DNA of 63,492 bases, the filler included, from Octopus bimaculoides (taxonomy: Eukaryota), in the NCBI RefSeq assembly GCF_001194135.2. It is 7 parts of 6 records of this genome, joined end to end, with 100 filler letters (N's around TTAATTAATTAA, not from the genome) between each part and the next. Parts side by side here need not be neighbours in the genome. Positions count along the whole stretch, not along the records: positions 18,153 to 29,781 come from NC_068985.1; 6 more parts are not named here. One strand, 5' to 3'. Positions 23,309 through 27,056 of this stretch are shown in pieces. Every line of letters starts with the position of its first letter. Within the stretch, counting starts at the first letter, position 1. The notes below the pieces were generated by a model. That model did no database searches. It saw nothing but the letters and a program-made list of their open reading frames with translations, and had not been told where the DNA came from. A program made the position numbers and the translations under genes.

Positions 23309-24836
23309 TTATTGGGCAACTTTGCATTCAGATTTCAAACATGGATGATTGAGACCTTGTTTCTGGATTAAACGATCAATCGCCAAGTTTTTCATTGAAC
23401 ATCTATCAACTTTTCCATTTCCAAGTTTAGGAAATTTGTCAAACTCTAGAAAATAATCTGGAGTAGATGAAATGTTGTCGAAGTTATTTGGCTGAGGCAA
23501 ATTTTCGTTGCAGAATTGAAACATTGATGCTTCATGCATTTTTTTACCATGCTTCATAATTAAACAAGCACAAATGTTTGACCCGTGTACTTCATCTGGT
23601 ACAGGGACAACAACAACGTTGTCAACGTCAGGGTAACGCAACATACGTTGCTCAACAAATCTAGTTGATACTTTTCTAGCTGATTTCGTAATGTAGTCAA
23701 CGTCTCTGCCGCACAAAATCATTTCCTTATTCTCAGTCATTTTACAAATATCGCTTGTCTTAAACCATCCTTTGTCTTGAATTGATTCTCCGTCAGCATT
23801 CACTTTTGAGCACCATGCAGCTCGCACACATAAATGACCTTCTTCGCCGATACCGACAATTTTGTTATTATCATCCACAATTTTTACTTCCACATCCGGA
23901 AAAATTTGACCAATTATTCCAGGAACATAACTATCAACATTGGCTTTCGTGAAGCTCTTATGACCAATTATTAGAGTTTCAGCGGCGGCCATATGTTGAT
24001 CGATTAATGCTGACCAAGATAAACCATGCTTCACATTATCTAAGGATGTTATGTCACCTGATATCATAACGAAATCCATCATATTTTCATCTTCTGGACA
24101 GAAATGTAAATCTGATGGAAGTAAGGCCATCTTTTTACATCCCTCTTTTGCCAAGATTCCTTTCAGTTTGGTGAAGTCTTTGGGGGCATTTAGGCTACAC
24201 ATATCTGCAGAGATATATTTCAGCCCAGTTGCTATAAATGAGAGAGGGTATGCACCACCAAAACCAAAATAGCGTTCATTGAAAAATGTATCGTTTTCAG
24301 TTAAATCAAGTTCTTTACAATAAACCTCTGAAGCATTAATGATATCAAAGCTGCTATGAGTAACCCGCTTAGGTTTTCCTGTTGTTCCAGATGTTTGAAG
24401 AATTATAGTGATATCTTCGGCCTCCATGCGAGGAAGAGTGATACTTATATCATTTTTTACCATTTCTACCAACTCATCATAACACAAACCTTTAATTGGT
24501 GATTTTGTTTTCGAAACATTAATGGCTAAACGTAGATTTGGAAAAGCTTCACTGACTACATTACCATTTTCGAAAATATCTGCTACCTTAAGTAATTTAT
24601 AGTAAAATGTCGGGTCTGAGTCAAAAATTATTGCCACACAATCTTCTAGCATGGGTAAGAAATCAGCTTGTCCGGCCCAGAGTCTCACCGAACATCCTCC
24701 AGCCATCATAATACCACTGTCATATACCATCCACTCAACACAGTTTGATACACAGAGGGCAATTCGATCACCTTTCTTGATTCCTTTCTTGACAAGGGCT
24801 TTAGCAAACTGCTCTGTTCCATCATAGAGTTGTTTT
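23309..24836 (-). CDS. ANL-superfamily acyl-CoA synthetase/luciferase-like enzyme, large terminal coding exon
   Basis: Acceptor ttttccttggcag|A AAA CAA at 24836; open to TAA at 23309 (KQLYDGTEQFAKALVKKGIKKGDRIAL..). Motifs: P-loop LQTSGTTGKPK, FNERYFGFGG, GHLCVR, GWFKTSD, GRDVD, VPVPDEVHG, PKLGNGKVDR. Confidence 0.92.
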
Positions 24837-25089
24837 CTGCCAAGGAAAATATACCAGAAAATGATAAACTTAAAAAAAAGGAAAGAAAATAAATATCTAC
24901 ATTAGAAATAACGACATGTATTAAAATATATACTCCAAGCGTATTAAACGTTTCATCTATGAAATAATTCGGTAGTATAAAACAATATGCATCGAATAGT
25001 TTTCTTAATATTTTTTTACCAGTAAATTCTCCCCATTCTTTGGCGGACTTTGTGTGGATTTTAAAAAACTAATGGGAAGTCTCCCGATA

Positions 25090-25350
25090 GTTTTGCTATG
25101 AAGCATGTCCGAGAAACTGACAGTGTATTTCGGAGGGTTCGAGGGAAGTGGAGGAAGTGAAGAGGTGAAAAGCATGTTTGGTTTCATGTATGTGGGAGGG
25201 GTGAGCAGCAACCAAGGGTACGAGGAAGGCGTCAAGGTAATTGGAGACGATTTCATTGGGGCAGGCTCTTCCCCGTGTTGTCTCTTCTCGAAAAATGGAC
25301 AGACTACCATACCCCATTTCTTTTATCTTCTTATCCACTTGACACGTAAA
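25090..25350 (-). mobile_element. Penelope (Poseidon-type) RT fragment in the ANL-gene intron
   Basis: RGRACPNEIVSNYLDAFLVPLVAAHPSHIHETKHAFHLF matches the PLE RT pattern GRPIVS..CPTE..S.YLD..L.PLV..LPSYI.DT.HAL.LF. Confidence 0.6.
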
Positions 25351-25647
25351 CATACACCTACACGTTCATAAACACACATAACCAAACACAGCGTCTTGTC
25401 GACACACATATTCATACATATCTACTCTTCGTACACATACACACCCACTCACGCACATATACGAACACACACACGCACACACACTCACACAAATTCCCAC
25501 ACAGAGGCAGTCTCACATACTCCTTTTCTCCACTTTTCACACACTTCCATACGCACATACATACACACATATCAATATATATATATGTATATATATAGGC
25601 TTTCATACACATATGCACATATATATATATTCATACGTATACATATG

Positions 25648-25683
<36 letters not shown>

Positions 25684-25832
25684 NNNNNNNNNNNNNNNNN
25701 NNNNNNNNNNNNNNNNNNNNNNNNNNNNNNNNNNNNNNNNNNNNNNNNNNNNNNNNNNNNNNNNNNNNNNNNNNNNNNNNNNNNNNNNNNNNNNNNNNNN
25801 NNNNNNNNNNNNNNNNNNNNNNNNNNNNNNNN

Positions 25833-25882
<50 letters not shown>

Positions 25883-26910
25883 TATCGTAGCCGTACAGCG
25901 AATGTGGCAACTACTATAAGCAGTTCCCCGAAGAATATTGGGTTTCATTTCTATTTTCCTTAAGTAAGATTAAAATTTGCAAAGTATCATTTTAAAGCAT
26001 CAACTATAAAAACTATGATCCAATAAAAGACCCCAGCCTTAAATGCAATAAAATATATGTAACTCTTGGCATCAAACAGCTCGCCCATATATTTGGAATA
26101 GGAAATAACCAATTCATTATCAAATAAACAATTTAGTCATAATAAAATGTGGTTTGGCCACGGCTTATAAGTTATGTGTATATATGTGTGTGCGTGCGTG
26201 TGTCAGAGTATGTCATGTGTAGTAACTTGTTTCATGAGAATAATCAAATATATTTTATTATGTCTAGATTGATTACTTAATTATAAACTAATTATTTCCC
26301 GTTCCAAGTATTTCATATGTGATTATATTAATATCAATTACAAAACCCCGACATCTTCACTTTTCGCCTGTCAACAGTAATCTTTATGCACATTCTCAAT
26401 ATTCTTCAATCAACTTAATCAATCTTGCATATATAAGTACAAGTTTCGCATTTAACATTCTTTTTCAAGTCTGCAAACATTATTTCTACAAACATTATGA
26501 AAGTTTTTTAAAAACTTTATAAATTAACGGGGGTTCCTAATAGAAGTATCGAGATCAATCACAGTTGCTGAACACTGTGTAATTATAATGATTGTATATC
26601 GATCAGACATATTGTACCTCAATGCTGCTTACTCAGCGCTTAGGCTATGACAAACTTTTAACTAGAAATGACATTCACCACCGCTGCTTTGTGCAGAAAC
26701 CCAATTTAATAAACGGGAATATATATATATAACTAACAAACATTATGTAATTCAAATATGTTAATGATCAAAAGGAAACATAGTGACACTACACCTTGGA
26801 AATGAACGTCTCTAAATCTCATAAATCCCAATCTAAACTCACTAAGTCTTTCTATTAAGAATGGATAAATATTTGCGTCCAAAACTGATAGACAAAATAT
26901 TAGCTCTTAC

Positions 26911-27056
26911 CGTGTTATAGCTGTTCGTTGGAATTTTCTGTCATAGTAAACAATCGCCTCTTTGTTTGGGTTAGCTTTAGCGAATTGATATAATCTCCCG
27001 GGAATAGTGTCGTTGCTCATAGGACGATTACTGATTCTGTGATAATAACTCGCCAT
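26911..27056 (-). CDS. ANL enzyme, first coding exon
   Basis: MASYYHRISNRPMSNDTIPGRLYQFAKANPNKEAIVYYDRKFQRTAIT cg|gtaaga. Phase 2 joins the 24836 acceptor in frame (CG+A = Arg), giving ~557 aa. An acceptor cttttcag at 27108-27110 implies an upstream non-coding exon. Confidence 0.88.

What the first reader, a model, noticed from the sequence alone, without database searches (positions are those of the whole stretch)
23309..27056. Intact but catalytically divergent ANL (luciferase/acyl-CoA synthetase) enzyme
Seen: a complete ~557-aa ORF with canonical splice sites. The P-loop (TSGTTGKPK) and the A10 adenylation lysine (PKLGNGK) are intact. Other normally conserved motifs are altered: A4 FH..G is FNERYFGFGG, A5 YGxTE is MAAAET, A7 TGD is TSD, and A8 GRxKDxIxxGG.N.YP.E.E is GRDVDYITKSARKVSTRFVE (loop Gly replaced, Pro and first Glu lost). 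Known: A8 supports the second, thioester-forming or oxidative half-reaction of ANL enzymes, and the light-organ crystal proteins of the firefly squid Watasenia belong to this superfamily. Inference: a lineage-specific cephalopod paralogue that may still adenylate an unusual acid but may not form a CoA thioester, or may act as a binding or structural protein.
Basis: partly seen in the sequence, partly recalled or inferred. Interest (0 to 1): 0.7.

Follow-up and report, generated by a model that had tools for sequence, protein, structure and literature searches.

The report
Octopus luciferase-family enzyme with degenerate motifs
This is an intact, selectively maintained octopus gene for an ATP-using "adenylating" enzyme from the cephalopod family that also contains the firefly-squid light-organ crystal proteins. 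It sits in an Octopus-only, tandemly duplicated branch that has lost a normally near-universal active-site motif, so its chemistry is probably unusual but remains untested.

Summary
A two-exon gene on the minus strand (27056-26911 and 24836-23309, GT..AG intron) encodes exactly 557 aa. The N gap lies inside the intron, within an (AT)n microsatellite, and does not touch the coding sequence.

The protein is a confident ANL-fold member by Pfam, by an AlphaFold2 model (pLDDT 85.8) and by Foldseek.

- **Family placement.** The protein groups with Watasenia wsluc2/4 and other octopod paralogues in a cephalopod clade (100% bootstrap). Inside that clade it belongs to an Octopus-only, tandemly duplicated subclade.
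- **Old changes.** The A4, A7 and A8 changes are not peculiar to this gene. They are shared across cephalopods and partly across bivalve, chiton and brachiopod relatives.
- **New change.** Only the loss of A5 (YGxTE to MAAAE) is specific to the Octopus subclade. It is rare among other ANLs (at most 2 of 202).
- **Not a pseudogene.** dN/dS against the O. sinensis orthologue is 0.35 (p = 4e-7), there are no indels, and the P-loop, A5 Glu, A7 Asp, A8 Arg and A10 Lys are conserved.

Best reading: an active adenylating enzyme with a modified second half-reaction. No biochemistry or expression data exist. Interest is moderate.

The parts
26911..27056 (-). Exon 1 coding part: ATG at 27056, 48 codons plus 2 nt (MASYYHRISN...RTAIT-R)
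   Evidence: tblastn of homologues aa 1-52 hits 27056-26901. The same exon in O. sinensis is L001 35932-36077.
24837..26910 (-). Single intron: GT at 26910-26909, polypyrimidine tract plus AG at 24838-24837
   Evidence: Donor and acceptor sequences are identical in O. sinensis. Collinear at 85-92% nucleotide identity with L001.
25684..25832 (.). Assembly gap (149 N), entirely intronic, inside an (AT)n microsatellite
   Evidence: The O. sinensis equivalent, L001 37604-37883, is AT/ATAC repeat only.
23309..24836 (-). Exon 2: completes codon 49, then codons 50-557 and the TAA stop (23311-23309); it encodes almost the whole enzyme
24365..24394 (-). A3 P-loop TSGTTGKPKR (aa 197-206), canonical apart from the last residue (Arg where Gly is usual)
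   Evidence: T197, G199 and K205 match 96-100% of 202 other ANLs.
24245..24283 (-). A4 region FNERYFGFGGAYP (aa 234-246). The canonical F-H is absent; the replacement motif (D/N)R-x-x-x-x-x-GG-(Y/F)-P is shared with bivalve, chiton, brachiopod and cephalopod relatives.
23975..23992 (-). A5 MAAAET (aa 331-336) in place of YGxTE(T). Tyr, Gly and Thr are lost and Glu335 is kept. This change is specific to the Octopus subclade.
23750..23758 (-). A7 TSD (aa 409-411). Asp411 is invariant; the Gly is replaced by Ser (codon AGC).
23651..23710 (-). A8 GRDVDYITKSARKVSTRFVE (aa 425-444). Hinge G-R..D and the terminal Glu are kept; loop GG becomes SA, Asn becomes Lys, Pro becomes Thr, and the first Glu becomes Phe.
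23405..23428 (-). A10 KLGNGKVD (aa 519-526) with the adenylation lysine K524

Best explanation
The locus is a functional two-exon gene, most likely from Octopus bimaculoides. It encodes a 557-aa protein of the ANL adenylate-forming fold with no recognised targeting signal and therefore probably cytosolic. The protein belongs to a cephalopod-specific clade that also contains the Watasenia crystal/luciferase-candidate proteins wsluc2/4. Within that clade it sits in an Octopus-only subclade of tandem duplicates (copies A-E; this is copy A).

Shown:
- The ORF is intact.
- Gene structure is conserved between species.
- The gene is under purifying selection.
- The fold is a confident ANL fold.
- The residues that bind ATP/Mg and catalyse adenylation are retained: the P-loop, A5 Glu335, A7 Asp411, A8 Arg426 with hinge Asp429, and A10 Lys524.
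- The replacement motifs are themselves conserved among the paralogues.

Inferred:
- The protein still binds ATP and forms an acyl- or aryl-adenylate from an unknown carboxylic acid.
- Adenine and phosphate contacts are remodelled, because A5 Tyr, Gly and Thr are gone.
- The second half-reaction is not a standard pantetheine-tunnel CoA thioesterification. The A8 hairpin has lost the Gly that lines that tunnel in acetyl-CoA synthetase, and it also lacks a Lys at the position of the oxidative Lys443 of firefly luciferase.
- The adenylate is therefore probably passed to another acceptor or to O2, as proposed for the squid relatives, or CoA ligation is inefficient.
For: Gene model and gap.

ANL membership:
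- Pfam gives 122 and 32 bits.
- 153 PDB chains match at E<=1e-3; the best are oxalyl-CoA synthetases at about 4e-20.
- The AlphaFold2 model has pLDDT 85.8 and pTM 0.77.
- Foldseek E-values reach about 5e-37. The best global superpositions (rmsd 4-5 A) are on entries described as adenylate or adenylate-analogue complexes, such as 4g36, 6q2m, 5gtd and 1amu.

Clade structure:
- A large score gap separates 15 family members (622-903 bits) from all other proteins (226 bits or less).
- NJ tree with 500 bootstraps: cephalopod clade 100, plus Mercenaria 100, Octopus subclade 100.

Tandem paralogues:
- In O. sinensis a second copy lies 25 kb upstream.
- In O. vulgaris copies B and D lie about 20 kb apart.

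Selection:
- NG86 window versus O. sinensis gives dN 0.052, dS 0.148, omega 0.35, with no indels.
- Fisher test p = 3.8e-7.
- Omega is 0.32-0.36 in copy D and in the A5-retaining sister clade, so losing A5 did not relax constraint.

Catalytic residues: the invariant columns in an alignment at 22-39% identity are exactly the catalytic ones, namely T197, S198, G199, G202, P204, K205, E335, D411, E444, G523 and K524. The motif table across 31 sequences is.

Rarity:
- Among 202 other ANLs, A5 Tyr is 91%, Gly 87%, Thr/Ser 97%.
- Loss of all three occurs in at most 2 of 202.

Other:
- No N-terminal extension equivalent to the roughly 70-aa presequence of the mite ACSF2.
- The C-terminus is ...KVAQ, not SKL.
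- Role of the A8 Gly in the pantetheine tunnel (Acs G524 mutants keep adenylation but lose thioester formation) and of luciferase K443: established ANL literature (Gulick and co-workers; Branchini and co-workers), cited from my own knowledge.
Against: - No expression, RNA-editing or biochemical data exist for this gene or any octopus paralogue. The literature search found none.
- A5 Thr and Tyr normally contact the adenylate, so their loss could severely weaken adenylation itself.
- The A8 loop Gly is absent in 17 of 202 other ANLs, so its loss does not prove loss of CoA ligation. Here it is replaced by a small Ala.
- An omega of 0.35 is only moderate constraint.
- The luciferase activity of the squid relatives has not been shown with recombinant protein, so the analogy is weak.
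- The model coordinates could not be inspected for pocket geometry.
Confidence: 0.55

Rival explanations
1. It is a conventional medium-chain acyl-CoA synthetase, as the database names suggest (YngI-like, ACSF2-like, oxalate-CoA ligase-like). The degenerate A5 and A8 motifs are tolerated, and the tandem copies differ only in fatty-acid or xenobiotic-acid specificity.
For: - The best sequence matches with known function are oxalyl-CoA synthetases and other CoA ligases, and source names say the same.
- All adenylation residues and the domain-alternation hinge (GR..D) are kept.
- The A8 Gly is replaced by Ala, a small residue.
- 8% of other ANLs lack Gly in this loop.
- Tandem expansion is typical of detoxification or lipid-metabolism enzymes.
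Against: - The names are automatic, based on 22-27% identity.
- The clade is sharply separated from all characterised synthetases.
- The whole A8 hairpin (GG, N, P, first E) is replaced in every cephalopod member.
- The A5 triple loss is almost unknown among working ANLs in my sample.
- The only members with any functional data (wsluc) are linked to ATP-dependent light emission, not CoA ligation (PMC4899746).
Confidence: 0.25
2. It is a non-catalytic or barely catalytic ANL-fold protein, such as a ligand or nucleotide binder, or a structural or storage protein. This would be analogous to the recruitment of enzymes as cephalopod crystallins and to the crystal-forming squid paralogues.
For: - A5 Tyr, Gly and Thr are lost and A7 Gly is lost.
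- Constraint is only moderate (omega 0.35).
- Squid relatives pack into protein crystals (PMC4899746).
- Multiple tandem copies are compatible with high-abundance proteins.
Against: - The P-loop TSG(T/S)TGKPKR and the A10 NGKVDR are 100% conserved in every copy where they can be read, although those copies are only 57-65% identical overall.
- A5 Glu and A7 Asp are invariant.
- That pattern is what selection on catalysis predicts, and it is not what pseudoenzymes usually show.
Confidence: 0.15
3. It is a young pseudogene or a decaying duplicate whose open frame survives by chance.
For: - It is one of many tandem copies.
- One related copy, P0007, has an aberrant C-terminus, and one sister-clade exon copy has a premature stop.
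Against: - 557 codons are intact in both O. bimaculoides and O. sinensis with zero indels. dS is 0.148 and intron identity is 85-92%, while dN is only 0.052.
- Omega is significantly below 1.
- Splice sites are conserved.
- Paralogues at dS 0.78 still give omega 0.29.
Confidence: 0.03

Closest known systems
Watasenia scintillans wsluc1-4 (arm-tip photophore crystal proteins, luciferase candidates; Gimenez et al. 2016, PMC4899746)
   Same: - Same cephalopod-specific ANL clade (100% bootstrap).
- Same N-terminal M-x-S-Y start directly on the core domain.
- Same A4 replacement ending in G-(Y/F)-P.
- Same loss of the A8 Gly loop, with a conserved GRxxD(F/Y)IxK.
- P-loop and A10 Lys retained.
   Different: - Only 30-32% identical.
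- wsluc2/4 keep an A5 of YSSNE or YASTE (Tyr retained; Thr retained in wsluc4), whereas the window clade has MAAAE.
- A7 is TDD versus TSD.
- The octopuses sequenced here are not known to be luminous (my own knowledge).
- There is no evidence of crystal formation or of coelenterazine disulfate use.
ACSF2 / Bacillus YngI-type medium-chain acyl-CoA synthetases (the names given by the databases)
   Same: - Same two-domain ANL fold.
- Same P-loop, A5 Glu, A7 Asp, A8 Arg and A10 Lys.
- Gimenez et al. report human ACSF2 as the closest characterised homologue of wsluc, at 24-26% identity.
   Different: - 22-24% identity to the mite ACSF2 and the Anoxybacillus ligase.
- No N-terminal presequence.
- A4 His, A5 YGxT and the A8 GG/N/P residues are all replaced.
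- CoA ligase activity is untested.
Oxalyl-CoA synthetase AAE3 (PDB 5ie0, 6qjz), the best solved-structure sequence match
   Same: The N-terminal part (about aa 13-232) and the C-terminal part (about aa 352-527) align at E about 4e-20. Foldseek TM is about 0.67-0.75.
   Different: HMMER could not align the central A4-A5 region (aa 233-351) at all. AAE3 has the canonical GRIKELINRGGEKISPIEVD A8, against GRDVDYITKSARKVSTRFVE here.
Firefly luciferase (Photinus pyralis; PDB 4g36, 6q2m)
   Same: The predicted structure superposes best on luciferase in the adenylate-forming conformation (TM 0.74-0.75, rmsd 4.3-4.5 A). The chemistry is ATP-dependent adenylation.
   Different: - 16% identity.
- By motif register, the position of luciferase Lys443 (second half-reaction) is Thr432 here, although the adjacent Lys433 is conserved across the cephalopod clade.
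- No SKL peroxisomal signal.

Membership tests
ANL superfamily (acyl-CoA synthetase / NRPS A-domain / luciferase) | Pfam AMP-binding (PF00501) and AMP-binding_C (PF13193) above gathering score | tested here: met
   122.3 bits against 29.9, and 31.6 bits against 24.5.
ANL superfamily (acyl-CoA synthetase / NRPS A-domain / luciferase) | Large N-terminal plus small C-terminal domain fold | tested here: met
   AlphaFold2 pLDDT 85.8 and pTM 0.77. Foldseek gives 647 PDB matches at E<=1e-3, and all of the best 50 listed are ANL enzymes.
ANL superfamily (acyl-CoA synthetase / NRPS A-domain / luciferase) | A3 P-loop (T/S)SG(T/S)TGxPK | tested here: met
   TSGTTGKPK at aa 197-205.
ANL superfamily (acyl-CoA synthetase / NRPS A-domain / luciferase) | A5 YGxTE | tested here: not met
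   MAAAE; only Glu335 is kept. Tyr, Gly and Thr are present in 91%, 87% and 89% (97% Thr/Ser) of 202 other ANLs.
ANL superfamily (acyl-CoA synthetase / NRPS A-domain / luciferase) | A7 (S/T)GD with the ribose-binding Asp | tested here: inconclusive
   TSD. Asp411 is invariant and the Gly is replaced. Gly is only 80% conserved in other ANLs.
ANL superfamily (acyl-CoA synthetase / NRPS A-domain / luciferase) | A10 catalytic Lys for adenylation | tested here: met
   K524 in NGKVDR, invariant in the family alignment.
ANL superfamily (acyl-CoA synthetase / NRPS A-domain / luciferase) | ATP-dependent adenylate formation | not testable with these tools
   Requires an ATP-PPi exchange or AMP-release assay.
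Acyl-CoA synthetase (ACSF2 / YngI / oxalate-CoA ligase, as annotated) | A8 hairpin GRxKDxIIxGGxNIxPxEIE, with the Gly that lines the pantetheine tunnel | tested here: not met
   GRDVDYITKSARKVSTRFVE. GG becomes SA, Asn becomes Lys, Pro becomes Thr, and the first Glu becomes Phe. Caveat: 17 of 202 other ANLs also have no Gly here.
Acyl-CoA synthetase (ACSF2 / YngI / oxalate-CoA ligase, as annotated) | Close or orthologous relationship to a characterised synthetase | tested here: not met
   22-27% identity to the mite ACSF2, the bacterial ligase and Mercenaria. The family is separated from everything else by about 400 bits.
Acyl-CoA synthetase (ACSF2 / YngI / oxalate-CoA ligase, as annotated) | Formation of an acyl-CoA thioester | not testable with these tools
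   Requires a biochemical assay.
Cephalopod wsluc-related ANL family | Monophyly with Watasenia wsluc proteins to the exclusion of other molluscan and non-molluscan ANLs | tested here: met
   NJ tree, 500 bootstraps: cephalopod clade 100%, with Mercenaria as sister at 100%. wsluc4 is also recovered as P0166 by the all-against-one search.
Cephalopod wsluc-related ANL family | Shared derived motifs (A8 GRxxD(F/Y)IxK without the GG loop; A4 ending in G-(Y/F)-P) | tested here: met
   Motif table.
Cephalopod wsluc-related ANL family | ATP- and coelenterazine-disulfate-dependent light emission, or crystal formation | not testable with these tools
   Known only for native Watasenia crystals (PMC4899746).

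The most novel reading that the evidence does not exclude
The Octopus A-E proteins are CoA-independent adenylating enzymes and the non-luminous counterparts of the firefly-squid crystal/luciferase proteins. They would pass their acyl- or aryl-adenylate to O2 or to a non-CoA nucleophile, using a remodelled nucleotide pocket (A5-less) and a Gly-less, Lys-bearing A8 hairpin. If so, the cephalopod clade as a whole would be a new functional branch of the ANL superfamily, and octopus would offer a tractable, non-luminous system for learning what chemistry preceded squid bioluminescence.
Probability: 0.2. Interest if true: 0.7.

Novelty: new variant of a known kind. Interest (0 to 1): 0.4.

Why it matters
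ANL enzymes are textbook examples of conserved core motifs and domain alternation. Here a whole subclade lacks three of the four conserved A5 residues and the A8 Gly loop, yet it has stayed under purifying selection through repeated tandem duplication. That makes it a natural experiment on which contacts are truly needed for adenylation and for the second half-reaction.

The subclade is also the closest octopus relative of the only ATP-dependent luciferase candidates known outside insects. Knowing what the non-luminous octopus proteins do would help explain how the firefly-squid system arose.

On the practical side, the database names (oxalate-CoA ligase-like, YngI, ACSF2) are probably misleading and should not be propagated as functions.

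Tried and rejected
- **Missing exon in the gap.** Rejected. The gap is microsatellite in both species, and the exon junction aligns gap-free to all homologues.
- **Second ANL gene or exon copy in the piece.** tblastn with 16 homologues found only this gene.
- **Pseudogene.** Rejected by dN/dS and intactness.
- **All motif changes specific to this paralogue.** Rejected. A4, A7 and A8 are older.
- **A5 loss relaxed constraint.** Not seen. Omega is about 0.35 in both A5-less and A5-retaining clades.
- **Squid and cuttlefish homologues.** Two word-index searches and one exhaustive search returned only Octopus, Argonauta, one Watasenia protein and non-cephalopod lophotrochozoans. Decapodiform sampling therefore rests on wsluc2/4 alone. 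wsluc2 was transcribed from a PDF table and is 1-2 residues short. wsluc4 was confirmed against P0166.
- **Literature on octopus paralogues or recombinant wsluc.** Nothing found.
- **Other ORFs in the piece.** No Pfam families, apart from a sub-threshold reverse-transcriptase fragment; no tRNAs.
- **Pocket inspection.** Not possible, because the model coordinates are not exposed.
- **First bootstrap run.** One search used unrooted replicates against a rooted tree and gave meaningless low supports. It was redone with split counting.
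Full report
**1. What is in the sequence**

The piece 18153-29781 is AT-rich (37% G+C). It carries one protein-coding gene, on the minus strand.

- The ATG is at 27056.
- Exon 1 runs to 26911 (146 nt) and is followed by GTAAGA.
- The intron ends ...TTTTCCTTGGCAG at 24837.
- Exon 2 runs from 24836 to the TAA at 23311-23309.

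The 149-N assembly gap (25684-25832) was tested first. It lies in the intron and is bracketed by (AT)15 and (AT)22. In the collinear O. sinensis locus the corresponding 280 bp are pure AT/ATAC microsatellite.

The protein sequence across the exon junction (…RTAITR|KQLYDGTEQFAKAL…) aligns to every homologue without a gap. The O. sinensis orthologue has the same two exons, identical donor and acceptor sequences, and the same 557 codons. The gap therefore has no bearing on the reading frame.

tblastn with 16 homologues finds no second copy or stray exon in the piece.

**2. Source organism**

The first 280 or so residues are 100% identical to O. bimaculoides XP_014780446.1. The whole piece is collinear with O. 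sinensis chromosome CM016863.1 at 78-92% nucleotide identity. The window is therefore most likely from Octopus bimaculoides.

**3. What kind of protein it is**

- Pfam AMP-binding scores 122 bits and AMP-binding_C scores 32 bits, both above their cut-offs.
- 153 PDB sequences match at E of 1e-3 or better. The best are oxalyl-CoA synthetases at about 4e-20.
- HMMER aligns only the N-terminal part (about aa 13-232) and the C-terminal part (about aa 352-527). It fails on the A4-A5 core.
- An AlphaFold2 model built with 34 homologues is confident (pLDDT 85.8, pTM 0.77).
- Foldseek returns only ANL enzymes among its best 50. The best global superpositions (rmsd 4-5 Å, TM up to 0.75) are on adenylate-conformation complexes such as luciferase 4g36 and 6q2m, and MenE 5gtd.

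**4. The motifs, put in context**

A 31-sequence motif table and a baseline from 202 other single-domain ANLs change their meaning.

| Motif | Window | Where the change is shared |
|---|---|---|
| A3 | TSGTTGKPKR | Canonical in all sequences |
| A4 | FNERYFGFGGAYP; His absent | Replacement "(D/N)R…GG(Y/F)P" occurs in every bivalve, chiton, brachiopod and cephalopod member, so it is ancient |
| A5 | MAAAE, from YGxTE | Only the nine Octopus sequences of the window's subclade |
| A7 | TSD | Variable (TDD, TSD, TAD, TGD…) across the same group; Gly is only 80% conserved in other ANLs; Asp is invariant |
| A8 | GRDVDYITKSARKVSTRFVE | GG loop, Asn and aligned Pro replaced in all cephalopod members |
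| A10 | KLGNGKVD | Gly-Lys invariant in the 14-sequence family alignment |

Further detail on A8. The octopod sister clade reads GRSTDFIKKSTVKLSIKLIE and wsluc2 reads GRVLDFIIKTDCCIPTHTIE. A chiton and Lingula already have ST or AT in place of GG. Mercenaria and several other bivalves are canonical. In the baseline, 17 of 202 unrelated ANLs also lack any Gly in this loop.

Further detail on A5. The sister octopod clade has Y(G/A)(S/T)(T/S)E, wsluc4 has YASTE, wsluc2 has YSSNE, and the bivalves, chiton and Lingula all keep Tyr and Glu. The window subclade reads MAAAE, MATAE, LSSAE, LTTAE, LASAE or HATSE. Simultaneous loss of Tyr, Gly and Thr occurs in at most 2 of the 202 other ANLs, and one of those is an alignment gap.

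In short, A5 is the real novelty here. A4, A7 and A8 are inherited family traits.

**5. Family and genome organisation**

A profile search separates 15 family members (622-903 bits) from everything else (226 bits or less). These are Octopus bimaculoides, O. sinensis, O. vulgaris, Argonauta hians, one unnamed assembly and Mercenaria.

An exhaustive search adds Watasenia wsluc4 (P0166), a third Argonauta protein, and more distant bivalve, chiton and brachiopod relatives. wsluc2 and wsluc4 were also taken from Supplementary Figure S1 of Gimenez et al. 2016.

An NJ tree with 500 bootstraps gives the following support:
- Cephalopod clade: 100%.
- Cephalopods plus Mercenaria: 100%.
- Octopus-only subclade containing the window: 100%.
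- The order of the three cephalopod branches is unresolved (49/49/2).

The Octopus subclade is tandemly arranged:
- In O. sinensis a 63%-identical copy lies 25 kb upstream of the orthologue.
- In O. vulgaris copies B and D are about 20 kb apart on one chromosome.
- No member of this subclade was found in Argonauta. Database coverage is thin, so this absence is weak evidence.

**6. Is it functional?**

| Comparison | dN | dS | ω |
|---|---|---|---|
| Window vs O. sinensis orthologue | 0.052 | 0.148 | 0.35 |
| Copy D, O. bimaculoides vs O. vulgaris | 0.072 | 0.205 | 0.35 |
| A5-retaining sister clade (three pairings) | 0.070-0.082 | 0.206-0.235 | 0.32-0.36 |
| Paralogues A vs C | 0.223 | 0.778 | 0.29 |

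- The window-to-O. sinensis comparison has no indels and the Fisher test gives p = 3.8e-7.
- Intron identity of 85-92% is in line with the dS value.
- The gene is therefore not a pseudogene, and losing A5 did not relax constraint.
- In an alignment whose members are only 22-39% identical to the window protein, the invariant columns are the catalytic ones: T197, S198, G199, G202, P204, K205, E335, D411, E444, G523 and K524.
- The replacement A4 and A8 sequences are themselves conserved within each subclade.
- That is the signature of a working nucleotide-dependent enzyme, not of a pseudoenzyme.

**7. Most likely mechanism**

Shown: the scaffold and the residues for ATP/Mg binding and for adenylation are retained. 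These are the P-loop, A5 Glu, A7 Asp, A8 Arg with the hinge Asp, and A10 Lys.

Inferred:
- The protein adenylates an unknown carboxylic acid.
- Adenine and phosphate contacts are remodelled, with Met331 replacing the stacking Tyr and Ala334 replacing the phosphate-contacting Thr.
- The step after adenylation differs from standard CoA ligation. The A8 hairpin has lost the Gly that lines the pantetheine tunnel in acetyl-CoA synthetase. It also carries Thr at the position of luciferase Lys443, although the neighbouring Lys433 is conserved across the clade.
- The roles of those two reference residues come from the established ANL literature, cited from my own knowledge.

There is no N-terminal presequence and no SKL signal, which suggests a cytosolic protein.

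My confidence in this overall reading is about 0.55. The rivals are:
- an ordinary acyl-CoA synthetase with tolerated motif drift, 0.25;
- a non-catalytic binder or structural protein, 0.15;
- a pseudogene, 0.03.

**8. Novelty and verdict**

The gene is already present in public annotation under automatic names. Its family link to the squid proteins is already in the literature at a coarse level.

What appears undescribed is the Octopus-specific, tandemly duplicated, A5-less subclade under purifying selection. I rate it a new variant of a known kind, with moderate interest (0.4).

Noticed in passing
L005 10001-32542 (O. bimaculoides CM046608.1) and L006 271-19388 (O. vulgaris OX597821.1): In the sister 'ACSF2-like' octopod clade, a single 49-codon exon 1 is followed by an array of 3 to 6 copies of the large exon 2. 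Every copy checked keeps a conserved polypyrimidine-AG acceptor, and most keep an intact 485-491-aa ORF. NCBI models in L005 splice the same exon 1 to two different exon-2 copies. This looks like a cluster of mutually exclusive alternative 3'-terminal exons, each encoding nearly a whole enzyme.
   Followed up: partly
Window CDS versus P0001, P0002 and P0003: Identity between tandem copies A and B is mosaic. O. bimaculoides 'isoform X2' (P0001) is 100% identical to the window for aa 1-280, then shifts to a copy-B-like C-terminus. O. sinensis A and O. vulgaris B are 100% identical over aa 200-320 but only 65-80% identical elsewhere. This suggests gene conversion between neighbours, or a chimeric gene model.
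   Followed up: partly
Window 23753-23755 (codon 410, AGC); copies C and D in L001, L002 and L004: The residue replacing the A7 Gly is encoded by AGC (Ser) here and by AGA (Arg) in copies C and D. A-to-I editing of the first base would recode both to Gly and restore a canonical TGD. In O. sinensis A and O. vulgaris B the codon is ACA (Thr), which editing would not rescue. This is purely speculative without RNA-seq.
   Followed up: no
Window 18381-18554, 27812-27983 and 28861-29010: A SINE-like repeat of about 150-175 bp occurs on both sides of the gene in opposite orientations. It has many copies in the O. sinensis, O. vulgaris and O. bimaculoides loci at 74-89% identity. ARAGORN finds no tRNA gene in the piece.
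   Followed up: partly
Window 21210-21368 (+): A short ORF gives a sub-threshold reverse-transcriptase match (RVT_1, 16.3 bits against a cut-off of 29.6). It is probably a decayed retroelement fragment downstream of the gene.
   Followed up: no
Window 27192-27243, 29013-29077, 25396-25680 and 29750-29781: Several microsatellites are present: (AG)26 about 135 bp upstream of the ATG, (ATA)21, and TG/CA- and AT-rich tracts in the intron. The piece itself ends in (TA)16.
   Followed up: no
Window 27062-27018 (-): An out-of-frame upstream ATG lies 6 nt before the start codon and opens a 14-codon overlapping uORF. The surrounding sequence is conserved in O. sinensis.
   Followed up: no
P0002 and P0003 (O. 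sinensis and O. vulgaris copies A and B); P0006 (O. vulgaris copy D): The almost invariant A8 Arg (99% in other ANLs) is Lys in O. sinensis A and O. vulgaris B (GKDVDF; AGA to AAA in O. sinensis A). O. vulgaris D has SRDD in place of GRDV. Even 'core' positions drift in this subclade.
   Followed up: no
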